From Haliotis rufescens (taxonomy: Eukaryota), in contig NW_025964013.1 of the NCBI RefSeq assembly GCF_023055435.1, forward strand, positions 3,534,001 to 3,598,000: 64,000 bases of DNA, written 5' to 3'. Positions 801-24,529 of the stretch are shown in pieces. The position numbers and the translations under genes were made by a program. The stretch's first letter is position 1. The number at the start of each line of letters is the position of its first letter. Below the pieces are notes generated by a model, which saw only the letters and a program-made list of their open reading frames with translations, searched no databases and was not told where the DNA came from.

Positions 801-838
801 GTGGAGTGTCAGTATTTACACAGCGTCGCGTATGAAGG

Positions 839-3800
839 ATGGCTTCTGTGTTCGTCTCCCCTGTAAAACCTGGCAGATTTGTGTTATTGGTATTGATACT
901 GATGAACCCGAGCCACACACACAGTACTACCACCAATACTATCACAGGTGAGAAACAGTTTTCATATTGTGGGTTGTCTCGTCTTGTGTATGAATGAGCA
1001 CTTGTAGAGGTGCGGGTGCAGGTGTATTTATTAGGTTTCCTACTTAGATTTAGTACTTTGATGTGGATTTGTATTGGAGTTACATGCGATTTCGATAATT
1101 CACTCTGTTTTAAGAAAATGATTATTGAGCATGACAGTGTGTATACATATATTGTTCTAGCAGAATAATTTTCGCATCTTCAAGTGCCATTTTCTACAAT
1201 TTATGGCATGGCTACTAATGTTAGTTTATAAGTATGTTGACCCTTAATTATATAAAACATCAACGCCAGAGAATAACCAGTCTCGATTATCCGACGAAAC
1301 AGATTCCATTGTGCGTGGACGGCAAAATAGCAATGAAAAGTGTATGAGTCTCTGAAACTGTGAATAAATTAACTGAGTCATGGATATCACATAATAAAAC
1401 ATATTCAAATGTATTGGTAAAATATGTATTTCACGTAACTAAAAAGATCCCATGCATTCCTGATCCAAATCAGAATCCATTGCTACTTATAAACAGATAC
1501 TTTTCAATATAGGATATTATATAGTTTTGAATATGATCCTTGGTCTATCAGCACTATTTCCGTGATTGTCGTTATTATTTTTAAAATGTCAAAACGTCGA
1601 CGACGGTCGTCAATATGGCGCAAAATTGTGAAAAGTAGCAGCTTTTGTCATTCGCGTCATAACATGTGGTAGACTAGACGAAACTGCATATCTTTAGTAT
1701 TATATATATAAGGATGTTTGGCCCTCATTCTATGAAGGTTCATACTCCAATGAACTCATACAACTTATAAATGTTTTTCACATTTTGTTTTCCTCAAAGG
1801 ATTTAGGCCTAGATTTAAACACAATTTTATTAAGTATGTGTGACATCATGTTTACACTGACAGCCATACAACAACCAGCCGTATCGCGGAATAAAATAAT
1901 TCCTCAAAACAGAGGTGGCATAAGCGTATGTTTGCATAACTTACTCTTCAGAAACATGGATTCACATAATATCACCATTAGATAAGGAAGGTCTGTCAAA
2001 AACTACCTCAGTAAGTCAGTCACAATGACAGCGCGTTGTACGCCGACACAATACACGTGATGGGAGCGATTTCGGAAGTTCTTAATGAACATGTGGCGGT
2101 TACATGTTTCAGTCATCAGTGATCAATTGGCCGATCATTGAAGGGCGATTAAAGATGATCCAAGTATACACTAAGTTCAATTCATAGATTGCTGTGGACT
2201 GTCACTGTCAACGTGGCCACGGATTGAGTCCACTACGATAGTTTGGATGTGAATTTCCTCGTTTTGTTCACTAGCATGGGTCATAGCAAGGCTAATAGTG
2301 AACGATCATGCAGTCAAGCTCTCTGACTTTTCTCAATGTATGCTAAAACGCTGAGTTCAAGATTAAAGGTCTAAATGATCAGTGAGAACGCTTCTGTATG
2401 TATTCGTGCTAGGGAATTCCCAGGGGTTTCCCCGGGAATGTGGAAGCAGTCCGTCAGTGTTTACGTCATTTAAAAAACACGATTTAGTCCATACACTTAT
2501 GAACGCCAATTTCGCGGTCATGTGACCGACCTTACATCCTAAGGAAAAGCTATACACCATGTAAACTTCAAATTAAAAAAATATATTATATATATGTCTT
2601 ATATATTGTAGTTACAGGCACAATCGATTTCACATTACAAGGATCTTCAACAAAGACTACAAAATACACGACAAGTCCAAATTACAAAAACGGTAATACT
2701 TTCACTATCTGTTGGGAAAAATTGTGTTTTTGTCCTATTGTAAAGTTATTAGAGTGCATATTACATCTGGACATTACATCTGTAAAATATATATCAAGCA
2801 CAAAGATTTCGGATCTAACTGAGACTTTTATATGATTTTGTTATCACATATTCAAATCTTCGTGTAATATATTGATCATATACTTAAGACTGAGTTTTAT
2901 CAAGTTCAGAAAAGCTATATTTTTATTGCAGTGAACAAAACACCAGATATTTCACCGTGGTGAACACAAATGTGATATTTCACTTTTGTTTTTATTGTTA
3001 TTCTCTTGAAAATGTTTCTTTATAAACTGTATTTGTTTCATTTCACTCGTAAATCGAGACTGTTCGTTTTGCAATACGCTATTTTAGTGACTTGATCAGC
3101 GTGTATTCTTTCACTTCTAACAGCGGTTTCGTAGATTTTTAGTATAGTTTCTGTTGAAGTTTATTTTGTATATAATCATATCCAAATGCATGATAAAGAA
3201 TTGTATTGACAACAAATGTTGTTTGTAACTTTTCTTTATATTTGTTAAGATTTTGTAAACAATGAACTACTTTTTAAGTTGCAATTATGTTGTACTAATT
3301 ACATAATTGTTTCTCCTCAGACAACTTAACGTTTGAATCGTCCTGTGCTGCTCTCAATTGGTCGGCAGCGGTGACAGACTGCATCAACAAGGGAGCCGCG
3401 ATATTCTCTTTAGAAGATTTAATTACATCCATCGGCAGCCATGTGTTGAAGAAGGCTACTGCTGAACACACCAAGATATGGATAAACATAAATGGTAATG
3501 TTGTGAACCTTGATCACCCATCACTGCTTTTACTGAACCTTACTCTCCCTCACTTCAAGCTTATGACATGAGCTGCAGTTCTACAATGTTGATTGCTACC
3601 CAGACAGAACAGCGAAACAGATTGACATTCAACTGACAATGGTTAATTATTGTTGAAAACATCCAATTGTTATAAACATATATTATAATGGATGAACATC
3701 CACTGAATAATATTCTTAACCTAACAGATACCTGCTGGACAGCTGACAATTGGTCATTCCAGGTCACCAACTGTAGTGACTCCAACTATTATGTCTGCAA

Positions 3801-6800
3801 ATCGAACACAAGTACCAGTAAGTATCTATGCCAGAGTGTATCTATTGACATCATAAATACTAGTACACAGGCAAGGGCGTATGGCAGTGAGTCGATTAGT
3901 GTGCCCTTCTGTGTAAACAGCCTGCCATGGACTCAAAGTGTTCGTATAAATATACTCCAAGCTCAAATATGATGAGGATAACCTTGTCATCAACTCTCAT
4001 GTTTACGAGGGTTGGACACGATCAGTGATATATGCATCTTGTCAAATGTGAAAGATGAGACAAAAGGCACGGTTAACACATTGATATATTGACATGTTTT
4101 TCGGCTGGCGTTACGTTACACAGCTCGACTTGACTAGTTACGTATGTTAAATGGGTAACACTTCTGATGTAAGTTAATGGTACTATTTATGAGAAATAAG
4201 TTATGTGTATTTAAAACAGATTGTCGCGCTTTCTACATAATTTGTATCTTACATTGACAGGTTCTGATAGGTACGTACCTTGTCGAAAAGAAACCACAGA
4301 TGCTTCCACGCAAGGTACATATCATGTATACAATTGTAGTTCCTCCATATCCAACCGGTGTTATGTATTTTATGTAAAATGTACATTGATAGGCAGAAAC
4401 AAATATTACTTAGCGATATGTATTTTGCATTGATATACACATTAACGCCTCAATTTTCGCGAAACAGTATTTCAATCGGGTAAATAATGAAATATTCCAA
4501 GGCATGTAAGAATATATCAGTAATATATTTTTGTAAACATGGATTACCATTTACCTATTTTATCCTTGACAAGTACAAGTCTACCTATCTGTTGTACTTG
4601 AACGTTGTATCCACACAGGATCTACAACATCAACACCACAGATTCTAACCATAACCCAGGGATCAAACACAAAAGGTAATCCACATGACTGTAAAACTGT
4701 GTAATGGTACATTGTGCGCTTTATCATCGTGTAATCATAGTTTAGGTAGTGTGAATTACTGACAACATTATTTACTTAATACTTAAATTCCTTACTTATA
4801 AAATGGTAAATATGGAGCAGCAAATTTATTCACTGACATATAGTCATAGTCTCACTTGAACATATTACCATCAAGGGAATAGTCCTTCAATCACGTATAC
4901 AGTTGTTAATATCGACCTAGGGGTGGTCGAGTAACCTCGTGGTTAAAGCGTTCGCCCGTCACGTCGAAGACCCGGGTTCGATTCTAGACATGGGCACAAC
5001 GTGTGAAGCCCATTTCTGGTGTCCCCCACCGTAATGTTGCTGGAATATTGCTAAAAGCGGCGTAAAACCATACTCACTCACTAATATCAACCTGTGTGTT
5101 GTCCTCTACATAACGGGGCCACTGTTGGCCCATTTGTCTGAGACGCTGTAATTCGCTGTTGCGTCCCGTGAGCACGCCAGACGCAAATGATTGTGGGTTC
5201 GAATTCCGGTTCGCCCCGATTATCTTTTTAGGTTTGTCAGCACCATCCCCGTGCTCGTGGGTTACACCAAAGTGGTAAACGTTTGATACCTGCATCATTT
5301 GTGCTTATCTCCCACGTGAAGCTGAGACGCCCTGATGTAGCTGGAATATTGTTCAAAGCGACGTTAAACCCCTCTCACTCAGTGACTCATTCTCCATGGT
5401 GACATCTATATTGATATGCAGTAACGAAAATTAATAGGCGATAATTTGTTTCGTTTTGATAAATATACATAAACAGACATATGAACATTTACGCCTCTAT
5501 TTTCGTGAAACAATTTTCAATAACGTAAATGATTAAATACTCCAAGTCGCGAAAGAATATATCAGTAATTTATCAATCACAAACATGGATAACAAATTAC
5601 CTACTTTCTCCTGGTCAAGTACATATATACCACCTGAAGAAGGGGCAAGAAGTAGCATCGAAACGCAATATATACATGGGTAGAGATTACAGACGTTGAT
5701 ACCCAAAGCCATTGCGTCTCCTTGTACTTCAACCTATTCATGACGGTCAAGACCTTATTTTTGCCAATATAATTAAACGCACATATGACAGGACGGGTAT
5801 ATGGCAGCATATATTAGTATGTTTGTACTTGTACGTTGTAATACACACAGGATCTACACCACCGAGTCTAACCATAGGCCCTGGAGCAAACACAAACGGT
5901 ATTTTTTATGACTGTAAAAGTGTATGATTGTTCATTGTGTGTATTATCATGATTTAGTTATGCATTGATTTGGATGTTAAAATGGTATGTTGCTCACCAC
6001 ATATGCCACGCATGACCAACTCGGTGTAACAAACATAAATCTACGTGTTTACATTTGCATGTTTGACATCGTATGTATTCCGCGCTTATTATGTGAATAT
6101 GTTGAGTGAATGCCCAATATGTATGATGTATGCTGTTGAAAAGGTTTTATTTTGGACTCGTAGATTGAAAACAGTTTTCACAGCATTTTAATTTGCCTTA
6201 CGTCAGACTTAACTCCCATTCTTAATTGAAGGTAAATCGAACATGTGATAGCCTCCAATGAAGAGTTCCATTGTATCGGGAGGACTTACAGAACTACTGC
6301 AATACCAATCAGATTCTGAAAAAAAATAATATATTTTCTGTCAAGATGTCATCGATGCATGCTATCTTTAATGATATATATATATTATTCATTTCTGCTC
6401 ACAGTTCCAATCATCCCCTCGATCGTATGTACGATAGCGGTTCTTGCTGCTGTGAGCATTGTTCTTGGGTGTTACTTAATCCAAAGGTAGGAACAGTAAC
6501 TAGTATTGTTTACAATATGATGATTCGTGCAAGTTGTTCTTCCTAGTAAGTGGATGGTACAATTGTGACAAGATCGCTGTCAGACGAATTCATTATACAG
6601 TTTAATTCAAAATGTCAACGCTAGAGAATAATCAGTCTAGACTATCTACCGAAACAGTTTCCATTAAGAGTAAAAGGCAAACTTCTGATTACACTAATAT
6701 GAAAGTCAGTGATGACTGGTACATGTAGGAATGTCCTGCTCTTAGACACACTCCAATGAACAATATTAGTCAGCTAACCCAGCATGCTGTTGAGGATTCC

Positions 6801-7341
6801 GGGTTAGGAACGGTTACCCAGCAACCTGTGGCTGTTTTAAAAGGCGACTTAATTGATTGGGTTGGTCAGGCTCGGTGAGTTTGTAGAAAGTTGTTCATCG
6901 TCCCCCGACCTTTGCTCATAATATCAATCATTGGATTGNNNNNNNNNNNNNNNNNNNNNNNNNNNNNNNNNNNNNNNNNNNNNNNNNNNNNNNNNNNNNN
7001 NNNNNNNNNNNNNNNNNNNNNNNNNNNNNNNNNNNNNNNNNNNNNNNNNNNNNNNNNNNNNNNNNNNNNNNNNNNNNNNNNNNNNNNNNNNNNNNNNNNN
7101 NNNNATCTAGCCTGTCGTCATCAATTGAAAATCCATTTGACCATTGATGGACTATATTTTCAGGAGGAAAACAGGGTCATCGAGAAATCAGGTGAATGTC
7201 GCAAGTGAAGGACAACCGGAAGTGGATTATTACTGTCACCTACAAGCTCGAGATGCTTCAGAAATGAACAATTATGCTACACTTAATGAACCTGAAAACA
7301 ACGAAAGGGCACCTGCAAACCAGTCGGAACAGAATGATTAA
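839..7341 (+). CDS. CTLD receptor 1: type I TM protein (signal peptide, S/T linker, compact C-type lectin domain, S/T stalk, TM, ITAM-like tail), about 290 aa
   Basis: Nine GT-AG exons in continuous frame: 839-947 (MASVFVSPVKPGRFVLLVLILMNPSHTHS...), 2612-2692, 3321-3494 (LNWSAAVTDCINKGAAIFSLED...IWINING), 3728-3817 (TCWTADNWSFQVTNCSDSNYYVCK), 4261-4314, 4619-4675, 5851-5898, TM 6405-6486 (VPIIPSIVCTIAVLAAVSIVLGCYLIQR), tail 7164-7341. Total 873 nt. AATAAA at about 7575. The N-gap at 6939-7104 lies in the last intron. Confidence 0.85.
2412..2432. promoter_or_regulatory. Tandem NF-kB-consensus sites in intron 1
   Basis: GGGAATTCCC followed by GGGGTTTCCC. Confidence 0.35.
4920..5080 (+). mobile_element. 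SINE family 1 (tRNA-derived head, ACTC tail)
   Basis: A box GTAACCTCGTGGTTAAAGC, B box GGTTCGATTC, tail GCTGGAATATTGCTAAAAGCGGCGTAAAAC-(ACTC)n. Confidence 0.85.
5113..5390 (+). mobile_element. SINE family 2 (extended tRNA-like head)
   Basis: Matches the copies at 44761 and 57180: ...GTGGGTTCGAATTCCGGTTCGCCCCGATTAT...AAGCTGA...GTTAAACCC-(ACTC)n. Confidence 0.8.
6939..7104. other. Assembly gap
   Basis: Run of N. Confidence 0.99.
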
Positions 7342-8134
7342 TTACACGAATCCTAAAACTGCTAATCACAACTGTAATGTATGAATTCTGCAGAGACCAT
7401 TGCCAATACCTACACAAGCTTAGGATGCAAATGCAGGATCTACACAGTTCGTGTCTACTGTTCTTCAGAGTCTGGTGTTCATTCTTTTTCACCGGTACAT
7501 ACATGCATGATACGTTACTATAGGATTACATATCCTTGTTTTTATTCTTTAATATCTTGCTCTGAACGCTATTCAATAAAACATTAATTTTAAACTAGTT
7601 GTGATTTGAGGAATCTATATGAGGAAATATAAATTCCACAAGTGATGAAAGTAACACAAAAATAGATGAATATTTGATTGCTGAGTTATATAAAATATAA
7701 AACCAGACGTAATTTAGCAGTCATGTATTCCGGCCAAAGTGTTAGTCATTATTTCCTGTTTCAGTTTAATGGTCAACTTTGTTCGAAAGCTGTGAAGATT
7801 CAAAGGTTATTTAATTTGAACATGTTGTTATACAGGGAAATGTTTTTCTTTCGCCAGTTTGAAGCAACGAAACTGTGCTCCCCAGGACGATCATTCAAAT
7901 ACTGTGACTGAGTTTAGGTTATCAAATACACGTTCTCGCAATCCATACCAGCCGTTCAATTCGTTAGCTTTGTATAACCCTGTTTGTGTGGGTATGCGAC
8001 ATGTTAATGGTGTGATACAAGTTTGATTTTCTCTTATATTCAGGATACATCTATACAAACATAGAATATTGTGAACTATGGGCCTGAGGTTTCTACTCAC
8101 TAAATTATTGTCACCCAGCCCTGCTACTGAGACC

Positions 8135-8298
8135 AGGCGGAGGTCTGATAGCCTAGTGGTTAAAGCGCTCGCTCGTTACGCCGAAGATCCGGATTCGATT
8201 CCCGACATTTTTATAATGTGTAAAGTCCATTTCTGGTGTCCCCCGCCGTGATATTGCTGGAATATTGCTAACTGCGGCGTAAAACCATACTCACTCAC
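8135..8298 (+). mobile_element. SINE family 1
   Basis: Matches the family consensus. Flanking repeat CTGAGACCAGG. Confidence 0.85.
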
Positions 8299-8386
8299 CC
8301 CTGAGACCAGGGTGTCACTATAAGAATAAAACAATAATGGAGAACGTGGTAAATGCCTTATTCTTATCAGCTAAAGGTATCTACAG

Positions 8387-8655: not shown

Positions 8656-8849
8656 TCGAAAGATAGACATCGACATAGACATAGTTTATTCCATAACTAA
8701 CCACTTACAGTGGTATAAGGACATCAATGCAAGAAAGTCATTTGATTACCAGAGGACACTCGTATGAGTGTGAGTATGATAATATACACCATTTAACTAT
8801 ACAGGAGACAAATCTGCCGAGGTTTCTTAACACTGAGTCTTTAGGAGCA

Positions 8850-9019: not shown

Positions 9020-9818
9020 TTTAGGAGCAGAAAAAAGTTTTTGAAGTTTATGATATTTAGGCTTGACATAATAGTACTTTTTAGGAAAGCGCTGACGATC
9101 AGTTTCAAAATGTGTACACTCAAACAAGTAGTGAAACCTAAAGGCTCAAGACCAAAATGACACTGACCAAGATCACTGATTAATATAAGTCATGAGCAAA
9201 TATACAAGCTGATTAGCTGATCAACTGTGTAACAGCTATTACCAAACACTCTGACCAGAAAGCCGCATAGACGGCCAATTAAACCGGCTGTATCCAATTA
9301 ACACCTGGGAGTAAATTAACTCAAATATCGGTTCACTTGTCAGACATCCAATTTGTCAGACGATCCAGTTGTCAGACAGATCAGTCAGGTGTGACCAGTG
9401 TAACTGCCTGGCTTCACCTACTACTTAATGAGCTGCTACATACTGTAGGTAGAGTCAGCTACTCCAACTCGCTAAGTAATAACTGAGTAATCTCGGCTTG
9501 GTAAGGAAGGGTGAAATGGTAACGGAGAGCCTGTCCCTAAACTATGCCTCTTGGACAATTAAGATCAGACGAACATGCCTGATTAAAATCTCAGTAAAAG
9601 GTCGTTTGGGCTGAGCAAGAAAATTCTAGACTTGAATATACAGGATCTGGACCTACAGAGTATCTAGACTCACAACATTAAACACGTACTTCACCTAAAG
9701 AGTAACTTGACTAACAACTATAGAAAGGTACTTGAGCTAAACAAGGCGCAATCCCGGTAAGATTGGTAATTCACGAATTACTAGATAAAGGGGTATATAA
9801 TATACAAGTCATGAACTT

Positions 9819-10604
9819 TTGTCACAGTTGAAATCCCTCGCCGAGGATGTGAAAGTGATTAGATCGGAATCAACAAAAATAAATGCTACACTACTTAATA
9901 TTCAAACTGATATCAGTGACATTAAATCCAGACAAGAAATATTACGTATAGATGTTGATGATATTGCAGATAGACTTGAGGCTCTGGAATACACTACTGC
10001 CTCGGTGAAGGAGAATATTGAGACTGTCTCTGTGATCGATGAGAAAATTGGTGTAATAGAAGATGCAATTGATAAACAGGAACAATACAGCAGACGCAAT
10101 AATGTTATCTTGTATGGTCTGTCTGAAAAACCCCGCGAAACTACCAACGCATGTAAGAATTATGTGTGTGATGTGTTAAATGCCTGTGCGAGTGAAGATG
10201 AAAACTCTAATCCTATCGGCGCCGATAGTATTATTGCTGCACACAGATTGGGTAACAAGAGTGGAAAATCGCCCAAACCGATGATAGTTAAGTTCTTATA
10301 TCCAGAAGATAAAGTATGGGCGCTTGGTCTCCGTGAAAAACTTAAGTCAAGGAAATTTGGCATATCCAGTGACTTGACGAAACGCCAGCGGGGGAAGCTG
10401 CAGGAGCTGAAGGACGCCAACAAATTCGGCTACTACAAGTATGGCAAGCTATTCGTTACAGACCGACGTCCCCCTCGTGACGACAGCAACCAGGGAAACG
10501 TGGGCTCTGATAATACAGGTAGCAGCATCGACATTGGCAACGACAGAGTGGGTAATCAGGGACGTTCTCTCCGTTCACGAGGCAAAAAGGGTAAAAAAAC
10601 ATAG
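9819..10604 (+). pseudogene. LINE ORF1 (coiled coil plus RRM-like), N-terminally truncated
   Basis: Heptad-rich region followed by EQYSRRNNVILYGLSE, AHRLG, PMIVKF and ISSDLT, which are typical ORF1p motifs. Confidence 0.85.
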
Positions 10605-10639
10605 GGGTGCGACGACAGCCCAAGCAACAACCGTGTTAT

Positions 10640-13600: not shown

Positions 13601-14035
13601 TCGTCTGAGCAAGATTGGCATGCAGCTGTTTCATCTAGCACTAAATCCCAGAGTTACTCTCTTTACAAAATTTCATTTGGCTTAGAAAGCTATATCAAGG
13701 TAGTAAATGTTTCAAAATTCAGAGCTGCTCTTGCTCAGTTGAGATGCTCCTCCCATCGGCTGCGAATTGAGACCGGTCGATATATTAAGGAAATTAGAGA
13801 ACAGAGACTGTGTTTGATGTGTAACCAGAATTTTATTGAGGACGAATATCATTTTGTGCTTGTATGCAATGCTTATAATAATTTAAGAGCTGAATACATT
13901 CCTCCTAAATATTTTACAACCCCTTCTAAAAATAAATTTAATGCTCTTATGTCATCCACTAACTCTAAAATCATACGAAATCTAGCAGTCTACGTTTACA
14001 AAGCTTTTCGACCTCGTTCATTACATACAGTCTAA
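10640..14035 (+). pseudogene. LINE ORF2 (AP endonuclease plus reverse transcriptase), frameshifted
   Basis: EN motifs: FWNVNGL, GLCETW, GGDFNARTG, FDYAI. RT motifs: NYRGISLL, QAGFRKG, FVDFKKAFD, GLRQGC, LFADD. C-terminus SHRLRIETGRY...CLMC...EDEYHFVLVC. Broken near 11717-11840, 13046-13150 and 13600. Confidence 0.92.
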
Positions 14036-14539
14036 ATATTCATTTGTGTATATGCATGTGTATGAATGTGTATGGATATGGATGTATATGTAAACTAGTG
14101 GTAATTCTTTTTTCTCCCTCTCTCTGTAAATATTTCTGTGTAATAGGCCTACGGCCTAACACTTTTGTGAATAAACAATATATATAATATACAAGTCGCG
14201 CATATATAGTATATAAGTCGCGCAATATAAGGGGACATCGCATCTTGATTCAGTTGAAATAATGCAGACAATTACTTGGGAGTCTGGAAGGAGTTATAAT
14301 AAAACTGAATACGTAAGTCTTAAATTATCTGACAGGTAGTCAAAATCTGCAAAAAAGTATCTGCAGGAGGACAAAATTTTCCGGCAGGCCGACAGAAAAG
14401 TTAGCAGCCACGGGCAGGCGGGCAGGCAGTTATTTCGGACGCTGTGTCTGCTTGCACGGTCTGACCATTCACAAACACGTGGGCTAACGACAGCGTCACT
14501 GACACTACCGACACATTCAAACACATCTGGTTTATTGTC

Positions 14540-15690
14540 GGTAGCTCAAAATTGTAGTAGTATCTCACTCACCATGTTAACTGAAATGTCTTCACGTTTA
14601 TTAGTTTCATATATCTGACTTGGAGGTATCCTTTACGAGTTATCTCGTGTTACAACACCATGCTGTTCCCGCGCTTGTCCACCCGCACTTTCCTTTGAGG
14701 GCCTCGGTTTGGTTGTCGGGCGTTGTGGTCTGTGAGGGGATGGTATATCAGGTGTTTGAAGAGTATGACAAGTTTGTCAACAACACCTGGAATGATTTCC
14801 CTTTTAACTCTTTCCCACGACGTTTGACAGCGTCCCTCTCACGGGTGAACATAAACGTGGCGATGACAGGGCGGGGTCGCGGATCCTCACCCTGACGGGG
14901 TGGTTAGTTTTTCTTCCTGATTTACAATGAAAATGCACTTTATCACTTTCAAATTAAAGTTCATCCTGAATGACCTTCTGAGCAGATTTTCAGTTTCTTC
15001 CCAAGTTCCACCATCCCCGTCGACTCCACTCAGCTCTTTGATGTTTGTAAATATAACACTGTGTCTCCCATAGAGCTATTTGGTCGATTAGTGACTCTCT
15101 CAGTTCCAAATCTTCTTCGTCAATGCTTTTCAATTCACCCATTTGTTGTTTGAGGGATTGTACGTCCCCTTCTATTGTTTTCTGGTCATTTTCCCACTCG
15201 TCAAGACTATCACTGATACAGGTAGCATTGGCTTCAATGTAAGTAGCGCGATCTTTTATCTATTGTCTTGACTTTCAGTTCCAGATTCGCAATGTTGACT
15301 TTAATGTCACTTTCGTCCTTTTCTACCCTTATCAATGCTGTTGCATCCTGATTAAGTTGCTGTGCCTGGAGACGAATGTATTGTTTGTATCGCCCTTCAA
15401 CAGTATACGTCATATTCTGGTACAACGGGTTAGGTGTGAACAAAGTATATAAAGACTCACGCACTAAGCTTCCTTTTGTGTATCGACGTGGCACTCGAAT
15501 AGGAATGTCCCCTCTATTCGAATCACAAGAGTCATTTTGACGAAGTCCTTTTCTACTCTTATTTTCACTCATTTTGTGACATATTGTATTTCTCTTGTCG
15601 ATCTGTTGCATTAACAGCTCGCTGTACGTTTGGAATCTCGATCAGGACATTTGCAGTGAGAGCGATTCACAAACACGTCATCTTATTTCA
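14540..15690 (-). mobile_element. Possible degenerate LINE ORF1-like remnant
   Basis: Broken minus-strand coiled-coil-like reading frames (ESDIKVNIANLELKVKTIDK...). No intact ORF. Confidence 0.3.
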
Positions 15691-16170
15691 CGTTTCTATG
15701 GGTAATGATATCCCATCATACGATCCTTACACGCCTAAGGGAAGTAACTCGTCCACCTGAGCTTTATATTTTTCTTTGAGAGGTAAAATATCGAAACACA
15801 CTGTGCTACAACTCCCGTTCCCCGTATGTATTAATGCAATGTTTATTACTTTGATTTGATATGGATTAGACAGCTGTCTGTCGGTGTTGATCGGTCTGTG
15901 GTTGCTCTGAGATGGTATGCCGCAGTACATCATGAATGCCCAACCACGACAGATTACGAGGCGACCAGTCCTTGTTTTCCCCCTTAAAGCAGAGCGCCAG
16001 GGTAACATAACAACTACTTTTAACTCCCCCGGTTGGACGCAGCCAGGGCATCGAACAACCGACCTTACGGATTTTTGTCCTATCCACTAGACCTCGAGTT
16101 TAATTAACTAAAACCATCCATAGTCTATGTCAGTTCGGCTTCGCATTGGTAATTGATCAAGACCTTCACT

Positions 16171-16269
16171 CACAGGGCCACGGATAGCCATACTATATTG
16201 ACTGTACTGATTACATTAAAAAAATGTAATCAGTACAGTCAGTGTAGTATGGCTATCCGTGGCCCTGTG
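16171..16269. mobile_element. 99-bp foldback MITE with 8-bp TSD (hAT- or P-like)
   Basis: Near-perfect palindrome CACAGGGCCACGGATAGCC...GGCTATCCGTGGCCCTGTG, flanked by CCTTCACT at 16163-16170 and 16270-16277. Confidence 0.85.
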
Positions 16270-16582
16270 CCTTCACTGATTATAAGCTGATTGAGGGAAC
16301 TGAACTATTTGTGTTGGAATAAGTGGCGATCATACGATGTGACATGTCATCTAACGGTGTTATATAGCTGGGGTGATGCTCATGCGTCAATACACACTCA
16401 CGTTTTCAGTGAACTGTCCCTGATCCAGGTCAGTCAAGCCGGTATACGGGTCACTCGGTACAATACGATACTTCCGTGAAATGGCGAGAGGGATATGGGT
16501 CTTAGCATTCTCTTCGAGTTATACATTAACCAAAAGACATTATCATTTCTGTATTTTCAACGAAGATCGACTAACATTAAAT

Positions 16583-19175
16583 CGTGAAGTTTAGCCAGTG
16601 AAATATGATACTTTTTGTATGGTAAAAAGAAACACCGATTACTGATCCAGGGGGAGGTAACTCTTGTCAACCTTCTGCGAACATTAGTCAGTATTGTTCA
16701 CTAAGCAGGAAATATTTTTGTTTCAAAAACATCTCTCGATCTGTAATGAAATCAGTTATGAATCCACGTTACTAAGTAGGGAAAGATCGCAACTTGAGAG
16801 GGACACATATGGATGACAAGTTACCAACAAACCGACAAGACAGAAGGGGGTCCGGCCATGTTTGAGAACTAAAACATGGTGAACATTAGCATGTATTATT
16901 TTATTTTTTTTCTCATTTCATTTATTTAAAGAGCAAACCTCGACGTGTTCCAGTCTGTTTTACCATGAAATATACACATTCATGTAAATATATGAAGTAA
17001 TCAACGCCAGAGAATAACTATTCTCGATCGGCAGAACAGAATGGCTTGCCATTGGGCGTAAACAAAAATAGCGGTAAAAGTAAACTACTTCACTCTGCCG
17101 AATGTTAAGCTGCGTTGTATAATATTGCATTGATGCATTATCCGTTTATGTTTTCGGACAAATGTATGCAAACATCATCCAACCATAAATATTGACATAT
17201 TAATGATGTGTTTAGTATTACAATAGTACCATGAAATTGTGTAAACACGTGTATACAGTTGACACTGCAACATTTACCTCGAATAAATTATCTGCTTGCT
17301 ATCAAATACAAGAGGACATGTTGTTTCCTCATAGATAAGGGACTTTTCTAAGATAAGGGACCTTTCTTCACTTGTACTACGCTAGCCTGCGCTATCAGCT
17401 GGGATGTTTATTGTCATAGCCAGTCAAGAACTGGTATTGGCAACGAAGCAGGAAACTGAGTCACATTATCTGTACGGTACACGTGAGTGTGGAGTGTCAG
17501 TATTTACACAGCGTCGCGTATGAAGGATGGCTTCTGTATTTGTCTCCCCTGTAAAACCTGGTTGCTTTGTGTTAATGGTATTGATACTGATGAACCCGAG
17601 ATACACACACAGTACGACCAGCAATACTACCACAGGTGAGAAACAGTTTTCATATTGTGGGTTATCCCGTCTTGTGTATGAATGAGCACTTGTATAGGTG
17701 CGGGTGCAGGTGTATTTATTAGATTTCCTACTTAGATTTTGTACTCTGATGTGGATTATTTGTATTGGAGTTACATGCGATTTCAATAATTCACTCTGTT
17801 TCAAGAAAATGATTATTGAGCATGACAGTGTGTATACATATATTGTTCTGTCAAACTCGATATATCAGAATAATTATCGCATCTTTAAGTGCCATTTTCT
17901 ATTAAACCGTGAAGTTTAGCCAGTGAAATATGATACTATTTGTATGGTAAAAATAAACACTGATTACTCATCCAGGGGGAGGTAACTCTTGTCACCCTTC
18001 TGCAAACATTAGTCAGTATTGTTCACCAAGCAGGAATATTTAGTTTCAAAAATTTCTCTCGATCTGTAATGAAATCAGTTATGAATCCACGTTACTAAGT
18101 AGGGAAAGATCGCAACTTGATAGGGACACATATGGATGACAAGTTACCAACAAACCGACAAGACAGGAGGGGGTCCGGCCATGTTTGAGAACTAAAACAT
18201 GGTGAACATTAGCATGTATTATTTTAGTTTTTTTTCTCATTTCATTTATTTAAAGAGCAAACCTCGACATTTTCCAGTCTGTTTTATCATGAAATATACA
18301 CATTCATGTAAATATATGAAGTAATCAACGCCAGAGAATAACTATTCTCGATAGGCCGAACAGAATGGCTTGCCATTGGGCGTAAACACAAAATAGCGGT
18401 AAAAGTAAACTACTTCACTCTGCCGAATGTTAAGCTGCGTTGTATAATATTGCATTGATGCATTATCCGTTTATGTGTTCGGACAAATGTATGCAAACAT
18501 CATCCAACCATAAATATTGACATATTTATGATGTGTTTAGTATTACAATAGTACCATGAAAATGTGTAAACACGTGTATACAGTTTACACTGCAACATTT
18601 ACCTCGAATAAATTATCTGCTTGCTATCAAATACAAGAGGACATGTTGTTTCCTCATAGATAAGGGACTTTTCTAAGATAAGGGACCTTTCTTCACTTGT
18701 ACTACGCTTGCCTGCGCTATCAGCTGGGATGTTTATTGTCATAGCCAGTCATGAACTGGTATCAGTAACGAAGCAGGAAACTGAGTCACATTATCTCTAC
18801 GGTACACGTGAGTGTGGTGTCAGTATTTACACAGCGTCGCGTATGAAGGATGGCTTCTGTGTTCATCTCCCCTGTAAAACCTGGTAGCTTTGTGTTATTG
18901 GTACTGATACTGATGAACCCGAGCCACACACACAGTACTACCAGCAATACTACCACAGGTGAGAAACAGTTTTCATATTGTGGGTTATCTCGTCTTGTGT
19001 ATGAATGAGCACTTGTATAGGTGCGAGTGCAGGTGTATTTATTAGGTTTCCTACATAGAGTTTGTACTTTGATGTGGATTATTTGTATTGGAGTTACATG
19101 CGATTTCGATAATTCACTCTGTTTTAAGAAAATGATTATTGAGCATGACAGTGTGTATACATATATTGTTCTATC
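16583..19175 (+). repeat. Tandem duplication (about 1.32-kb unit) of promoter plus exon 1
   Basis: CGTGAAGTTTAGCCAGTGAAATATGATACT starts both units (about 16583 and 17908). Both units contain exon 1. Confidence 0.9.
17527..17635 (+). CDS. Duplicated signal-peptide exon 1 (alternative first exon of CTLD receptor 2)
   Basis: MASVFVSPVKPGCFVLMVLILMNPRYTHSTTSNTTT followed by a gtgag donor. Intact 109-nt phase-1 exon inside an approximately 1.3-kb tandem duplication. Confidence 0.65.
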
Positions 19176-22100
19176 AGAATAATTTTCGCATCTTCAAGTG
19201 CCATTTTCTACAATTTCTAGGCATGGCTAATAGTGTTAGTTTATAAGTGTGTTGACCCTTAACTATATAAAACGTCAACGCCAGAGAATAACCAGTCTCG
19301 ATTATCCGACGAAACAGATTCCATTGTGCGTGAACGGCAAAATAGCAATAAAAAGTGTATGAGTCTCTGAAACTGTGAATAAATTAACTGAGTCATGGAT
19401 TTGACATAATAAAACATGTTCAAATGTATTGGTAAAATATGTTTTTCACGTAACTAAAAAGATCCAATGCTATAAATGCTCGATGTAAAGAGTCACAACT
19501 CGCTGTGATTTGCATTCCTTATCCAAATCAGAATTCATTGCTACTTATAAACAGATTCTTTTCAATATAGGACATTATATAGTTTTGAATATGATCCCTG
19601 GTCCATCAGCACTATTCCCGTGATTGTGGTTATTATTTTTAAAATGTCAAAACGTCGATTACGGTTGTCAATATGGCGCAAAATTGTGAAAAGTAGCAGC
19701 TTTTGTCATTAGCGTCATTACAAGTGGTAGACTAGACAAACTGCATATCTTTAGTAAATTAAGGATGTTTGGCTCTCATTCTATGAAGGTTCATACTCTA
19801 ATAAACTCATACAACTTTTAAATGTTTTTCACATTTTGTTTACCTCAAAGGATTTAGGCCTAGATTTAAACACAAGTTTATTAAGTACGTGTGACATCAT
19901 GTTTACACTGACAGCCATACAACAACCAGCTGTATCGCGGAATAAAATAGTTCCTCAAAACAGAGGTGGCATGAGCGTATGTTTGCAGAACGTACTCTTC
20001 AGAAACATCTGACACAACACATGTATTCAAATAATATCACCATTAGATAAGGAAGGTCTCTCAAAATCTCCCTCAGTAAGTCAGTCACAATGACAGCGCG
20101 TCCTGAGCCGACACAATACACGTGATGGGAGCGATTTCGAAAGTCTAATGAACATGTGGCGGTTACATGTTTCAGTCATCATTGATCAATTGGCCGTTCA
20201 TTGAAGGGCGATTAAAGATGATCCAAATATACACTGAGTTCACTTCATAGATTACTGTGGACTGTCACTGTCAGCGTGGCCACGGATTGAGTCCATACTA
20301 CGATAGTTTGGATGTGCATTTCTTCGTTTTGCTCACTAGCATGGGTCATAGCAAGGCTAATAGTGAACGATCATGCAGTCAAGCTCTCTGACTTTTCTCA
20401 ATGGATGATAAAACTCTGAGTTCAAGATTAAAGGTCTAAATGATCAGTGAGAACGCTTCTGTATGTATTCGTGCTAGGGAAAACCCTGGGAATATGGAAG
20501 CAGTCCGTCAGTGTTTACGTCATTTCAAAAACACGGTCTTGTCCATACTCTTATGAACGTCAATTTCGCGATCATGTGACCGACTTATCATCCAATGTAA
20601 AAGCCGTATATGATGTAAACTTCAAATTAAAAAATATATATATGATATATATGTGTGATATATTGTAGTTACAGGCACAATCGATTTCACATTACAGGAT
20701 CTTCAACAAAGATTACAAAATACACGGCGACAAGTCCAAATTACAAAAACGGTAATACTTTCACTATCTGTTGTGAAAACAAATGTGTTATTGTCCTATT
20801 GTAAAGTTTTTAGAGTGCATATTACATCTGGACATTATTATTGTTATTCTCTTGAAAATGTTTCTTTACGAACTGTATTTGTTTCATTTCCTATGCAATT
20901 TTTGACCGAGTTATATAAGTATTTCATTTTATTAAATAGAATGAGTGAGTGAGTTGGGTTTAACGCCGTTTTTAACAGTATTCCAGTTAAATCGCGGCGT
21001 GTCAGATCAATGTGGGAGGAAAGCCCGGAGTGATATTTATTCCATTTTATTAAATAGATCCCATGCAATGTGTAGGTATATATGTAATCCATTTTATAAA
21101 ATAGATCCCATGCAATATGTGACCGAGGTATATATGTAATCCATTTTATTAAATAGATCCCATGCAATATGTGCCCCAGGTATATATGTATTCCGTTTTA
21201 TTAAATAGATCCCATGCAATATGTGACCCAGGTATATATGTATTCCATTTTATTAAATAGATACCATGCAATATGTGACCGAGGTATATATATATTCCAT
21301 TTTATTAAATAGATCCGATGCAATATGTGACCGAGGTATATATGTATTCCATTTTATTAAATAGATCCCATGCAATATATGACCGAGGTATATATGTATT
21401 CCATTTTATTAAATAGATCCGATGCAATATGTGACCGAGGTATATATGTATTCCATTTTATTAAATAGATCCCATGCAATATGTGACCGAGGTACGTAGG
21501 ACCAAGGAATACTCCTGAATATGACCCATATTTCGTCAGCACTATTCCCCTGCTTGTGGGCTGCAAAAATGTCAAAACGTCAACGACCGTCATATTTTTT
21601 TAACCTCTCCTCATAATTAAGCTTAATCCCTGTGACATAACTGATTAACACAATCAAATCACTGTTTAAGCTAAAGCGCTTACTCACTCACTATTTGACT
21701 CAGTCTATCCTGTTTTGATTAAGGTATGAATTATTTGTTGAACTAATGATATAATTGTTTCTCCTCAGACAACTTAACGTTTGAATCTTCCTGTGTTGCT
21801 CTCAATTGGTCGGCAGCGGTGACAAACTGCATCGACAACGATGCCGAGATATTCTCTGTAGAAGATTTAATTACATCCATCGGCAGCAATGTGTTGAAGA
21901 ATGCTACTGCTGAACACACCAAGATATGGATAAACATAAATGGTAATGTTGTGAACCTTGATCACCCGCCACTGCTTTTACTGAACCTTACTCTCCCTCA
22001 CTTCAAGCTTGTGACATGAGCTACAGTTCTACAATGTTGATTGCTACCCAGACAGAACAGCGAAACAGATTGACATTCAACTGACAATGGTTAATTATTG

Positions 22101-24529
22101 TTGAAAACATCCAATTGTTATAAACAGATATTACAATGGATGAACATCCACTGAATAATATTCTTAACCTAACAGATACCTGCTGGACATCTTTCAATGG
22201 GTCATTCGAGGGCGCCAACTGTAGTGACTCCAACTATTATGTCTGCACATCGAACACAAGTACCAGTAAGTATCTATGCCAGAGTGTATCTGTTGACATC
22301 ATAAATACTAGTACACAGGCAAGGGCGTATGGCAGTGAGTCGATTAGTGTACCCTTCTGAGTAAACAGCCTGCCATGGTCTCAAAGTGTTCGTATGAATA
22401 TACTCCAAGCTCAAATATGATGAGGATAACCTTGTCATCAACTCTCATGTTTACGAGGGTTGGACACGATCAGTGATATATGCATCTTGTCAAATGTGAA
22501 AGATGAGACAAAAGGCACGGTTTACACATTGATATATTGACATGTTTTGCGGCTGGCGTTACGTTACACAGCTCGACTTGACTAGTTACGTATGTAAAAT
22601 GGGTAACACTTCTGATGTAAGTTAATGGTACTATTTATGAGAAATAAGATATGTGTATTTAAAACAGATTTTCGCGCTTTCTACATAATTTGTATCTTAC
22701 ATTGACAGGTTCTGATTGGTACGTACCTTGTCGAAATGAAACCACGGATGCTTCCACGCAAGGTACATATCATGTATACAATTGTAGTTCCTCCATATCC
22801 AACCGGTGTTATGTCTTTTATGTAAAATGTACATTGATCGGCAGAAACGAATATTACTTGGCGATATGTGTTTTGTATTTATATACACATTAACGCCTCA
22901 ATGTTCGTGAAATAGTATTCAATCGGGTAAATGCTGAAATATGCCAAGGCATGTTAGAATATATCAGTAACATATTTTTGTAAACATGGATTACCATTTA
23001 CCTATTTTATCCTTGACAAGTACAAGTCTACATATCTGTTGATGCACGGCCGTGTACAGCTATAGAGACATACAATAAAGATATCTCACCTTTTGTATTC
23101 TTTAAACACAACTATCGATGGTATATTCTTGCCCTTCACACTCCTAGTGGGGGCACGGGTGGCCTAGTCTAAGGCACCGCAATTCGCTCTGCAATGTTGC
23201 GTCCCTTGGGCACTCCAGAAACTGATGATCGTAGGTTCGATTATGTTTCTATGTTTGTGAGCATTATACATGTGCTCGTGGGTTACACCTAAATGGTGAA
23301 CGTCTTAGACCTGGAACTCTTCGGGCTTTCTTCCGACATGAAGCTTATACACCGTGACGTTAAACCAATCTCTCACTCACACTTTCCCCTAATGAAAGCG
23401 CGAGAAGTAGCCTCGGAACGTCATATTTAGAGATTTGAGAGCTGATGTCCATAAATCTTGTATCTCGTTTATGTATCTTGACCTTGTTCATGTTTCTATA
23501 GTAACGCACATGCGTGGCAGTGTATATAGTTGTACTTGAACGTTGTATCCACACAGGATCTACAACATCAACACCACAGATTCAAACCACAACCCAGGGA
23601 TCAAACACAAAAGGTAACCCACATGACTGTAAAACTGAGTAATGGTACATTGCGCGCTTTATCATCGTGTAATCATAGTTTAGGTTGTGTGAATTACTGA
23701 CAACAGTATTTAATTAATGATTATGAACAATCATTACATGTTTTATTACATTTCTATGAAATTACTTATTAATAAAATAGTAAATATAGAGTAGCAAATT
23801 TATTCATATAGTCATATTCTTGTTTTACATAAAGACGTTGGTTGACGTTTAATAATAGTTTCACATGAACATAACCATGCATGTTTATATGTGTTCTCAG
23901 TTCTAATCATCGCTTCTGTGGTATGTGTGATAGTGGCTCTTGTTGCTGTGGTCATAATCTCAGGCTGTTATATCATTAAACGGTGAGATTTTTATTTTAA
24001 TCTAATCAAATGACCTATAATTATGTTAAAAATAGCGAGTATCGATCCGAAAAAAACGTCATCATCTCATTCACCCAAAACCCTCACCCCATCAGGTCAT
24101 TCCTATTCTCTCTATCTTCCCAGCTCTGTATATTATAGAAGGTTTGTTTCTGTATTCAGCAACAAGAAACCAATCAAGTACGCAGTGAGAACTGAGAGTG
24201 TTATGTATCACAGACAGCACCCGGATCCTGGTATAGTAGAAGAACCGCAGCTGGCAGATGTGCAGCTGGTATGTCCTACAGAAGCTGACGGTGGAAACAG
24301 TGGCATGAGTGAAAGGCAGGACGGTGAATATGACATTCTGTGTCGACCAGTGGGCAATGGAGGTAAAGTTGTCCCGTCAGACAGCACGGCCGTGTACAGC
24401 CATCTGTGTGCATCTAACGCAGCAGCTGGACCCCAGGAAGAAAACAATTATGACACCACCACGCTGCCACAGTATGACAGGAGGCCTGTTGACAGGATAT
24501 ATGACAGAATACATGTGCCTGACAATTAA
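18850..24529 (+). CDS. CTLD receptor 2 (paralog of receptor 1) with a longer multi-tyrosine tail; about 311 aa if the frameshifted exon 2 is skipped
   Basis: Exons 18850-18958 (alternative copy at 17527-17635), [20669-20751, 83 nt, frameshifted], 21769-21942, 22176-22265, 22709-22762, 23557-23613, TM 23901-23982 (VLIIASVVCVIVALVAVVIISGCYIIKR), tail 24160-24529 (YDIL, YSHL, YDTT, YDRI). AATAAA at about 24738. Confidence 0.8.
21030..21495. repeat. 52-bp minisatellite, about 9 copies
   Basis: Unit ATATATGTATTCCATTTTATTAAATAGATCCCATGCAATATGTGACCGAGGT. Absent from the paralogous intron of receptor 1. Confidence 0.9.
23149..23380 (+). mobile_element. SINE family 2, diverged
   Basis: GGGGGCACGGGTGGCCTAGTC head. 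Confidence 0.75.

What the first reader, a model, noticed from the sequence alone, without database searches (positions are those of the whole stretch)
3321..24529. Paired receptors: homogenised ectodomain joined to anciently diverged TM/tail halves
Seen: receptors 1 and 2 are nearly identical, introns included, from the promoter to just after exon 6 (about 4860 versus 23820), and then DNA similarity collapses. The TM exons remain homologous (both 82 nt; LGCYLIQR versus SGCYIIKR). The tails align only distantly (YCHLQARDAS----EMNNYATL versus YSHLCASNAAAGPQEENNYDTT). Receptor 2 lacks the second YxxL but has extra YDIL and YDRI motifs. Known: vertebrate paired receptors such as Siglec-5/14 arise by gene conversion of the 5' half. 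Inference: an activating/modulatory receptor pair produced by conversion or chimeric duplication.
Basis: partly seen in the sequence, partly recalled or inferred. Interest (0 to 1): 0.82.

Follow-up and report, generated by a model that had tools for sequence, protein, structure and literature searches.

The report
Abalone lectin-like receptors sharing heads, different tails
In red abalone, four tandem receptor genes share one nearly identical promoter and outer half but carry two old, different tail types, which resembles vertebrate immune "paired receptors" in a mollusc, although what the tails signal is untested.

Summary
The window is Haliotis rufescens contig C235. Receptors 1 and 2 are 91-97% identical in DNA, introns included. 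The identity runs from about 2.7 kb upstream of exon 1 (outside the window) to 4836/23845, in intron 6, and then collapses.

Receptor 1 is one of three whole-unit tandem copies with a short ITAM-like tail (S type). Receptor 2 (RefSeq LOC124136739) has the same 5' block joined to an older long tail (L type), whose nearest kin lies about 78 kb upstream.

Trees across four Haliotis species disagree between the two halves. Outer domains group by species, and S monophyly is rejected there (p-AU 1e-49). TM and tail group by type (99/99). This is concerted evolution of the 5' module, probably by unequal crossing-over with conversion patches.

Both genes are transcribed. RNA contigs join R1's TM exon to its tail exon across the assembly gap with no mismatch, so the gap is intronic.

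The "activating/modulatory" reading is unproven. The L tail has no ITIM, the first YxxL is lost in the H. rubra S form, and the lectin-like fold has only weak support.

The scan has unchecked notes of other ITAM-tailed or paired receptor candidates elsewhere in this genome.

The parts
1..2776 (+). Upstream flank, exon 1 and exon 2 of R1. This is the 5' part of the shared block, whose start lies about 1.9 kb before the window.
   Evidence: 91-97% identical to 14788-20837.
839..947 (+). R1 exon 1: start codon, signal peptide, phase-1 donor.
   Evidence: The R2 equivalent reproduces RefSeq P0016 exactly.
2642..2692 (+). R1 exon 2: optional Ser/Thr-rich exon, 51 nt.
   Evidence: The equivalent exon is in RefSeq isoform X1 of R2.
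3321..3494 (+). R1 exon 3 (A): first half of the C-type-lectin-like domain.
   Evidence: An RNA contig matches it with 0 mismatches in X16.
3728..3817 (+). R1 exon 4 (B): second half of the lectin-like domain.
   Evidence: RNA depth falls on this bin only, not on the flanking introns.
4261..4314 (+). R1 exon 5 (C): stalk.
4619..4675 (+). R1 exon 6 (D): stalk, the last exon inside the shared block.
4836..4836 (+). 3' end of the high-identity block in R1 (intron 6). S-type paralogs stay colinear beyond this point; R2 does not.
5851..5898 (+). D': a duplicate of exon 6 found in S-type genes only. It has good splice sites but appears unused.
   Evidence: RNA depth is zero, and it is absent from the RefSeq models.
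6405..6486 (+). R1 TM exon, S type, 82 nt.
   Evidence: RNA contigs cover it.
6939..7104 (.). Assembly gap inside the intron between the R1 TM and tail exons.
   Evidence: It is spliced out in RNA contigs.
7164..7341 (+). R1 tail exon, S type: YCHL-x10-YATL, then the stop codon.
   Evidence: Only 3 copies exist in the genome. RNA contigs match with 0 mismatches.
9801..14700 (+). LINE/RTE-like retrotransposon filling the spacer between the R1 unit and the R2 unit. The end coordinate is approximate.
14788..23845 (+). R2 copy of the shared 5' block: flank, two copies of exon 1, and exons 2-6.
17527..17635 (+). Extra copy of exon 1, part of a 1325-bp tandem duplication.
18850..18958 (+). R2 exon 1, the copy used by RefSeq.
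20698..20751 (+). R2 exon 2, present in isoform X1 only.
   Evidence: equals P0023.
21769..21942 (+). R2 exon 3 (A): lectin-like domain.
   Evidence: R2-specific letters are seen in RNA contigs of X15 and X16.
22176..22265 (+). R2 exon 4 (B).
22709..22762 (+). R2 exon 5 (C).
23042..23528 (.). Dispersed-repeat insertion in R2 intron 5, absent from R1.
23557..23613 (+). R2 exon 6 (D).
23901..23982 (+). R2 TM exon, L type, 82 nt. It is 68% identical to the R1 TM exon and 80.5% to Gm3.
24160..24529 (+). R2 tail exon, L type: KPIKYAVR box, DGEYDIL, VYSHL, NNYDTT, YDRRPVDRIYDRI. An in-frame alternative acceptor lies at 24139.

Best explanation
The locus is part of a Haliotis-restricted tandem cluster of type I membrane receptors.

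Shown:
- Architecture: signal peptide, one compact C-type-lectin-like domain, a Ser/Thr-rich stalk, a TM segment and a cytoplasmic tail.
- Two old 3' modules exist. The S module is a TM exon plus a 59-aa tail with YxxL-x10-YxxL. The L module is a TM exon plus a roughly 122-aa tail with a juxtamembrane KPIKYAVR box and several conserved tyrosine motifs.
- In H. rufescens, three complete S units lie in tandem (Gm2, Gm1, R1; 15-21 kb start-to-start spacing). They are followed by a partial unit (flank plus exons 1-6) that runs into an L module. That partial unit plus L module is R2.
- The 5' module is 91-97% identical among all four genes, with a mosaic of who is closest to whom. The 3' modules are orthologous by type across species.
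- Both R1 and R2 are spliced and transcribed in the same RNA samples.

Inferred mechanism: repeated unequal crossing-over between misaligned 5' modules, plus shorter gene-conversion patches. This amplifies the S units and keeps every 5' module homogenised. The L module sits at the array's edge, 3' of the exchange zone, so it is never replaced. The same process must run in each species, because S and L outer domains are species-alike.

Inferred function: one fast-evolving ligand-binding head and one promoter are wired to two signalling outputs. The S output would be an ITAM-like, Syk-type signal. The L output is different and unknown. This resembles vertebrate paired receptors.
For: - Array structure and genome-wide copy counts.
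- Exon models: all sites are GT-AG and all ORFs are complete. The models reproduce RefSeq XP_048236532 and XP_048236531 (R2) and XP_048236535 (Gm2) exactly.
- Identity break at 4836/23845.
- TM exon identities: R1-R2 68%, R2-Gm3 80.5%, S-S 93-94%. The first part of R2's tail exon is 93.5% identical to Gm3.
- Mosaic pattern: 12 consecutive informative sites in the CTLD exons group R2 with Gm1 and R1 with Gm2, then the pattern changes. A permutation test on the run length gives p = 0.0013.
- Cross-species trees: S monophyly is rejected for the outer domain (delta lnL 123.6, p-AU 1e-49). With exons 4-6 only it is still rejected (p-AU 6.7e-5). H. rubra S and L are sisters in the outer-domain tree (100/98). 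The TM and tail tree splits S from L at 99/99, and holding H. rubra S and L together there is rejected (p-AU 0.025).
- RNA: depth falls only on exons 3-6, TM and tail. Contigs join TM to tail with 0 mismatches. Both R1-exact and R2-specific exon 3 forms are present.
- The ITAM regex occurs in 0.03% of shuffles of the S tail.
- Mollusc ITAM-Syk signalling has experimental precedent in oyster CgIgR (PMC6994640).
Against: - Tail function is untested.
- The first YxxL is YFSH in the H. rubra S form.
- The L tail has no ITIM or ITSM, and neither TM segment has a charged residue. An opposing-signal pair is therefore not shown.
- No RefSeq protein for R1 was retrieved.
- Direct RNA evidence for R2's exon 6 to TM joint was not obtained. 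It rests on the RefSeq model and on a 0.27 word share in the RNA runs.
- H. rubra S and L are annotated as isoforms of one locus that share exons 1 and 3, which inflates their similarity. The test on exons 4-6 alone still holds.
- Unequal crossing-over and long conversion tracts cannot be told apart from one genome.
- Lectin-fold support is weak.
Confidence: 0.72

Rival explanations
1. The 5' blocks are uncollapsed haplotypes or a false tandem duplication in the assembly, and only one gene is real.
For: - The copies are about 95% identical, and abalone are highly heterozygous.
- An assembly gap sits in R1.
- H. cracherodii shows only one annotated S protein.
Against: - The duplicated block ends 2 kb before the gap, and the gap's flanks are colinear with two paralogs.
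- The units differ by kilobase-scale insertions: a LINE, a minisatellite and an exon 1 duplication.
- R1-exact and R2-specific transcripts coexist in the same RNA runs. An independent DNA run (X5) holds contigs within 1-2% of R1, and it also holds R2.
- S and L proteins with near-identical heads exist in independent assemblies of H. cracherodii and H. rubra.
Confidence: 0.03
2. It is one transcription unit with alternative 3' cassettes. The 5' exons splice by choice to an S or an L TM and tail cassette, so the "genes" are isoforms.
For: - RefSeq annotates H. rubra S and L forms as isoforms X7 and X2 of one locus sharing exons 1 and 3.
- All ectodomain exons are phase 1-1, and both TM exons start in phase 1.
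- An earlier scan note (s1-815229) proposes tail switching downstream of R2.
Against: - Each H. rufescens unit has its own upstream flank, exon 1 and complete set of exons.
- RefSeq calls them separate loci.
- The R1 TM and tail contigs carry R1's own letters.
- The H. rubra isoforms differ in exons 4-6, so two exon sets exist there as well.
Confidence: 0.1
3. It was a single ancient chimeric duplication or exon shuffling event. There is no ongoing homogenisation, and the 5' halves look alike only because the event was recent.
For: - The R2 block starts at the same phase as the repeat units and ends cleanly in intron 6.
- Its divergence from S units (5-9%) equals the divergence among the S units themselves.
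Against: - S and L tails both predate the split from H. rubra, yet the outer domains are species-alike in H. rubra and in the H. rufescens/H. cracherodii group. That needs at least two independent events or continuing exchange.
- The mosaic of informative sites within H. rufescens also points to continuing exchange.
Confidence: 0.1
4. These are not immune signalling receptors. The tyrosine motifs are YxxPhi sorting or endocytosis signals, or chance, and the family serves adhesion, uptake or another role.
For: - No ITIM, and an imperfectly conserved ITAM.
- No Pfam domain passes its threshold.
- The family is known only from Haliotis, always as "uncharacterized protein".
- The tissues of the expressing runs are unknown.
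Against: - The ITAM-pattern spacing is rare in shuffles (0.03%) and is kept in 4 of 5 S tails.
- Tyrosine motifs in the L tail are conserved across four species at 69-94% tail identity.
- The CTLD exons carry 17.5 nonsynonymous against 1.5 synonymous differences, as expected for receptors in an arms race.
Confidence: 0.25

Closest known systems
Siglec-5/Siglec-14, Siglec-11/16 and PILR alpha/beta (vertebrate paired receptors maintained by gene conversion; PMC13358205)
   Same: Closely linked genes. The promoter-proximal and ligand-binding exons are kept nearly identical by recurrent exchange, while the TM and cytoplasmic exons are old and different. The binding domain evolves fast.
   Different: - The domain is C-type-lectin-like, not Ig V-set.
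- The "activating" form carries its own ITAM-like motif instead of a charged TM residue with DAP12.
- The partner has no ITIM.
- Three S copies face one L copy.
- The shared block is about 9 kb and coincides with a tandem-repeat unit.
- This is a mollusc, so the origin is independent.
NK-complex C-type-lectin-like receptors (NKR-P1, Ly49, CD94/NKG2)
   Same: The best solved-structure match of the outer domain is the NKR-P1B CTLD (E = 0.0018 over the whole domain). These are clustered, rapidly evolving families with activating and inhibitory members.
   Different: Those are type II proteins with N-terminal tails and ITIMs or charged TM residues. Here the proteins are type I with C-terminal tails, the long-loop region of the CTLD is almost absent, and the Pfam threshold is not reached.
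Oyster CgIgR (ITAM-bearing receptor that recruits CgSyk; PMC6994640)
   Same: A mollusc type I receptor with an ITAM in its own cytoplasmic tail. It gives precedent for ITAM-Syk signalling in molluscs.
   Different: It has five Ig domains rather than a CTLD, no described paired partner and no concerted evolution. No sequence relationship was tested here.
Dectin-1 / CLEC-2 hemITAM receptors
   Same: The L tail has a single acidic-flanked YxxL (DGEYDIL), which resembles the DEDG-YxxL hemITAM. It is conserved in four species.
   Different: The membrane orientation is opposite, the tail is much longer with further tyrosine motifs, and the resemblance rests on the motif alone (my own knowledge of the hemITAM consensus).

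Membership tests
Paired receptors (sense of PMC13358205) | Closely linked genes. | tested here: met
   R1 and R2 lie 18 kb apart in one tandem array on contig C235.
Paired receptors (sense of PMC13358205) | Highly similar ligand-binding halves joined to divergent TM and cytoplasmic halves. | tested here: met
   The 5' block is 91-97% identical in DNA and 85% in protein. The TM exons are 68% identical, and the tails are not alignable by BLASTP.
Paired receptors (sense of PMC13358205) | Similarity maintained by gene conversion or recurrent exchange, seen as discordant 5' and 3' trees. | tested here: met
   S monophyly is rejected for the outer domain (p-AU 1e-49; exons 4-6 only, 6.7e-5). Tails split by type at 99/99. 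There is a mosaic of informative sites.
Paired receptors (sense of PMC13358205) | Opposing signalling: an ITIM on one member, and an activating motif or adaptor-binding charged TM residue on the other. | tested here: not met
   The L tail has no ITIM or ITSM, and neither TM segment has a charged residue. Only the S tail fits an activating pattern.
Paired receptors (sense of PMC13358205) | A shared ligand. | not testable with these tools
   Needs binding assays. The CTLD exons differ at 17% (exon 3) and 29% (exon 4) of residues.
ITAM-bearing receptors | Yxx[LI]-x6-12-Yxx[LI] in the cytoplasmic tail. | tested here: met
   R1, Gm1, Gm2 and H. cracherodii S fit with a spacing of 10. The pattern occurs in 0.03% of shuffles. 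The H. rubra S form does not fit (YFSH).
ITAM-bearing receptors | Tyrosine phosphorylation and recruitment of a tandem-SH2 kinase (Syk or Shark). | not testable with these tools
   The only precedent is in oyster (PMC6994640).
C-type lectin-like domain (Pfam PF00059) | Score above Pfam's gathering threshold. | tested here: not met
   14-17.5 bits against a cut-off of 22.6, and only profile positions 3-50 of 107 match.
C-type lectin-like domain (Pfam PF00059) | Similarity to solved CTLDs over the whole domain. | tested here: inconclusive
   A family profile hits NKR-P1B at E = 0.0018 (query positions 39-121 against chain positions 18-127). It also hits NKR-P1A, a type II antifreeze protein, a snaclec and CD69 at E = 0.09-7. 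The top ten protein-language-model neighbours are all Lectin_C, but they score only 0.81-0.84.
C-type lectin-like domain (Pfam PF00059) | CTLD fold. | tested here: inconclusive
   The AlphaFold2 model from 13 sequences has mean pLDDT 38.6 (about 50-59 in the domain). The order of secondary-structure elements (beta, alpha, alpha, then four beta) is compatible. No fold search was run on so weak a model.

The most novel reading that the evidence does not exclude
Abalone have independently evolved a vertebrate-style paired-receptor system. A fast-evolving lectin-like head and its promoter are kept in step by recurrent exchange across an ITAM-bearing receptor (amplified to three copies in red abalone) and a long-tailed partner with a different, conserved multi-tyrosine signalling module. 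The system would be driven by a pathogen or self-ligand arms race.
Probability: 0.3. Interest if true: 0.78.

Novelty: new variant of a known kind. Interest (0 to 1): 0.6.

Why it matters
Paired receptors homogenised in their ligand-binding half are a hallmark of vertebrate innate immunity. They are usually explained by pathogens that exploit inhibitory receptors. A protostome case, built from a different domain and a different wiring, would show that this genomic design evolves convergently. It would also provide a tractable, lineage-restricted receptor family in a farmed and endangered group that suffers from infectious disease.

The locus also shows cleanly how the edge of a tandem array can protect one signalling module while everything 5' of it is homogenised. 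The genes are currently "uncharacterized" in RefSeq. My searches of open-access papers and bioRxiv preprints found nothing on them or on invertebrate paired receptors maintained by conversion.

Tried and rejected
- BLASTP of the S tail against the L tail gave no alignment.
- Pfam on single exons and on full proteins gave only sub-threshold Lectin_C hits.
- The AlphaFold2 model of R2 from a 13-sequence alignment was too weak (pLDDT 38.6), so I ran no fold search.
- No protein for R1 turned up in two word searches and one full-library search.
- The word search with the L tail found it only in four Haliotis species. This does not exclude shorter or longer kin.
- The haplotig reading is rejected (see rivals).
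- "Recent whole-gene duplication with fast 3' divergence" is rejected, because both tail types have orthologs in H. rubra.
- The excess of nonsynonymous change in the CTLD (17.5 against 1.5) is suggestive but not significant alone (my binomial estimate p is about 0.07). The exon-versus-intron divergence (6.4% against 4.3%) is likewise not significant.
- I built joined (spliced) models only inside local scripts, for translation, alignment and trees. All searches used single exons by reference or proteins that the databases returned.
- I neither filled nor read the gap's letters.

Full report
**Where we are**

The window is Haliotis rufescens (red abalone), contig C235:3534001-3598000, in an assembly of 1.33 Gb. 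The window has two gaps, at 6939-7104 and 58740-58950.

**The gap**

- The gap at 6939-7104 lies between an 82-nt TM exon (6405-6486, GT donor, phase 2) and the last exon (7164-7341, AG acceptor). The reading frame closes without anything from the gap.
- Two public runs behave as RNA: their contigs cover exons and leave introns empty. Each holds a contig that runs from 6403-6484 straight on to 7162 and beyond. One has 1 and 0 mismatches on the two sides, the other 0 and 0 (records 7 and 14). The 2-nt offset is the shared AG.
- The gap's flanks are colinear with two paralogs, whose matching flanks lie 114 and 131 nt apart. I used coordinates only and did not read the letters.
- The gap is therefore intronic and does not affect the finding.

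**The observation**

- BLAST and MAFFT confirm a large direct repeat.

| R1 side | R2 side | Identity |
|---|---|---|
| -1911..1158 | 14788-17849 | 97.3% |
| 1453-2776 | 19511-20837 | 91.1% |
| 3274-4594 | 21719-23041 | 95.2% |
| 4591-4780 | 23529-23718 | 95.8% |

- Weaker similarity continues to 4836/23845.
- It is interrupted by an unalignable stretch (2777-3273 vs 20838-21718) and by a 487-nt insertion in R2.
- Inside 3290-4836, introns are 95.7% identical and exons 93.6%.
- Beyond the break, only the TM exon is recognisably homologous (56/82 bases).

**Gene models**

- All sites are GT-AG, and the outer-domain exons are all phase 1-1.
- R1: exon 1 839-947, optional exon 2 2642-2692, exons 3-6 at 3321-3494, 3728-3817, 4261-4314 and 4619-4675, TM 6405-6486, tail 7164-7341. 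This gives 248 aa, or 265 aa with exon 2.
- R2: 18850-18958, optional 20698-20751, 21769-21942, 22176-22265, 22709-22762, 23557-23613, TM 23901-23982, tail 24160-24529.
- The R2 models translate exactly to RefSeq LOC124136739 isoforms X2 (311 aa) and X1 (329 aa).
- I retrieved no RefSeq protein for R1. Accession XP_048236534, between those of its neighbours, may be R1.

**It is an array, not a pair**

- A search of the whole assembly with the 5' block found two further copies at 95% and 91%, and an older one at 65-80%, all just upstream of the window.
- After fetching 70 kb upstream, tblastn and blastn give this gene order:
  - Gm4: two lectin-like domains, LOC124136742.
  - Gm3: LOC124136740, with an L-type TM and a truncated L tail.
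  - Gm2: LOC124136808, S tail.
  - Gm1: LOC125371791, S tail.
  - R1: S tail.
  - R2: L tail.
- Gm2, Gm1 and R1 are whole-unit tandem copies. They are 89-95% identical from the upstream flank through the tail and about 2.5 kb beyond it, with starts 15.1, 20.7 and 16.7 kb apart.
- R2 is a partial unit that begins at the same phase (14788) and ends in intron 6.
- The S tail exists only three times in the genome.
- The L tail has older relatives spread over about 400 kb of the same contig.
- The lectin-like exon has at least 11 relatives.

**Two histories in one gene**

- R2's 5' coding sequence differs from R1, Gm1 and Gm2 by dS 0.04-0.06, and from Gm3 by dS 0.38.
- R2's TM exon is 68-70% identical to the S genes and 80.5% to Gm3.
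- The first 169 nt of R2's tail exon are 93.5% identical to Gm3.
- Within the 5' block the nearest relative changes along the sequence. In the lectin-like exons, 12 consecutive informative sites group R2 with Gm1 and R1 with Gm2. Further on, the other two patterns take over. A permutation test of the run length gives p = 0.0013.
- R2's lectin-like domain is therefore closest to that of the S gene Gm1, not R1.

**Other species**

- A full-library search with exon 3 alone (57 aa), followed by a word search, returned only Haliotis proteins, all "uncharacterized".
- H. cracherodii has S, L and Gm3-like forms. H. rubra has S and L forms, annotated as isoforms X7 and X2 of one locus. H. asinina has an L form.
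- In the alignment, S and L of one species share species-specific residues in the outer domain, while TM and tail follow type.
- Maximum-likelihood trees give these results:
  - Outer domain: S is never monophyletic in bootstraps, and forcing it costs 123.6 lnL (p-AU 1e-49). H. rubra S and L are sisters (100/98).
  - TM and tail: S and L split at 99/99, and holding H. rubra S and L together is rejected (p-AU 0.025).
  - Because the H. rubra isoforms share exons 1 and 3, I repeated the test on exons 4-6 only. S monophyly is still rejected (p-AU 6.7e-5).
- Both tail types therefore predate the split from H. rubra, while the heads have been homogenised separately in different lineages. This is concerted evolution of the 5' module.

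**Mechanism (inferred)**

- The shared block in R2 is about 9 kb. It starts where the repeat units start and ends in intron 6, 55 nt before the L TM exon.
- The array reads as 5' block, then (S 3' part, spacer, 5' block) three times, then the L 3' part.
- Unequal crossing-over between misaligned 5' blocks would amplify S units, homogenise all 5' blocks, and never touch the L module at the right edge.
- The mosaic in the lectin-like exons, and the 93.5% patch shared by the tails of R2 and Gm3, point to shorter conversion events in addition.
- I cannot separate these mechanisms with one genome.

**Expression**

- In runs X15 and X16, depth falls on exons 3, 4, 5 and 6, the TM exon and the tail. 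It is zero on the introns and on D' (5851-5898), a duplicate of exon 6 that the RefSeq models also skip.
- Exon 3 is present both in R1's exact form (X16, 0 mismatches) and in a form with R2-specific letters (3377A, 3386G, 3391C).
- A third run of the same study has neither form.
- The two genes therefore appear together, as their near-identical upstream DNA would suggest.
Reads were laid on R1 because of the gap.

**What the proteins are**

- Outer domain:
  - About 90 aa with the pattern C..W..A...C...G..I.S, then WI.., then C…C…YYVC.
  - Pfam Lectin_C stays under threshold.
  - A family profile hits the NKR-P1B CTLD over the whole domain at E = 0.0018, followed by other CTLDs.
  - The language-model neighbours are all Lectin_C, but at scores that count only as leads.
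  - The structure model was too weak to use.
  - I call it a divergent, compact C-type-lectin-like domain with moderate confidence.
- S tail:
  - It fits Yxx[LI]-x10-Yxx[LI], which occurs in 0.03% of shuffles.
  - The pattern holds in R1, Gm1, Gm2 and H. cracherodii, but not in H. rubra (YFSH).
- L tail:
  - It has a juxtamembrane KPIKYAVR..S.MYH..HPDPG box, which is shared with the two-domain relatives.
  - It also has DGEYDIL, VYSHL, N.YDT and YDRRP.D.IYDR.H, conserved at 69-94% across four species.
  - It has no ITIM or ITSM.
- The S tail looks like the VYSHL…NNYDT segment of the L tail (hhalign local P = 0.0013). BLASTP sees nothing.
- Between R1 and R2 the lectin-like exons carry 17.5 nonsynonymous and 1.5 synonymous differences (dN 0.089, dS 0.028). 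Their exons are less alike than their introns. This is suggestive of diversifying selection but not significant alone.

**Comparison with what is known**

- The design matches vertebrate paired receptors kept alike by gene conversion, such as Siglec-5/14, Siglec-11/16 and PILR (PMC13358205).
- It fails their signalling criterion, which requires an ITIM on one member against an adaptor-coupled partner.
- ITAM-Syk signalling from a receptor's own tail is documented in a mollusc, oyster CgIgR (PMC6994640).
- My searches of the open literature found nothing on these abalone genes or on invertebrate paired receptors maintained by conversion.
- The scan holds unchecked notes of other ITAM-tailed or "paired" candidates elsewhere in this genome.

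**Verdict**

- The chimeric history is strongly supported and turns out to be recurrent across species.
- The "pair" is an array of three S genes plus one L gene.
- The signalling interpretation remains a hypothesis.

Noticed in passing
window 9801-14700: A LINE/RTE-like retrotransposon. ORF1 (9801-10601) is coiled-coil-like, and ORF2 (10605-11714) has an endonuclease domain (Pfam Exo_endo_phos, 5e-9). It fills the spacer between the end of the R1 unit and the start of the R2 unit.
   Followed up: partly
window 16576-19176: A 1325-bp tandem duplication (95.9%) gives R2 two copies of exon 1 with its promoter-proximal DNA. Paralog Gm2 has the same feature. RefSeq uses the downstream copy.
   Followed up: partly
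window 20970-21593 and 35060-38026: A 52-bp minisatellite sits in R2 intron 2. It is shared with upstream paralog Gm1 and absent from R1. A much larger array of 52-bp units lies at 35-38 kb.
   Followed up: no
window 5851-5898: D' is a duplicate of stalk exon 6 with intact splice sites, present in all three S-type genes. It shows no RNA depth and is skipped by the RefSeq models.
   Followed up: yes
L014 (C235:3474001-3484000), about 3479289-3479456: The tail exon of Gm3 (LOC124136740) is 93.5% identical to R2's over 169 nt. The match then breaks off, which gives a truncated tail ending ...GGNSGMNVSL without the tyrosine motifs. The H. cracherodii ortholog has the same truncation.
   Followed up: partly
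window 58519-58692: A weak third lectin-like exon (28% identity to R1 exon 3, E = 0.09) lies directly before the second assembly gap (58740-58950).
   Followed up: no
window 61083-64000: Strongly C-rich tandem repeat arrays, with GC skew -0.5 to -0.86.
   Followed up: no
L015-L016 (about C235:3487500-3496300): Two blocks of a 37-bp satellite, 0.9 and 2.9 kb long, lie about 5 kb apart. The nearer block ends directly upstream of the first S-type unit, at the left edge of the array.
   Followed up: no
H. rubra LOC124257045 (P0004, P0018): RefSeq annotates the S-tailed and L-tailed forms as isoforms of one locus that share exons 1 and 3 but differ in exons 4-6. This could be merged tandem genes or real read-through splicing.
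   Followed up: partly
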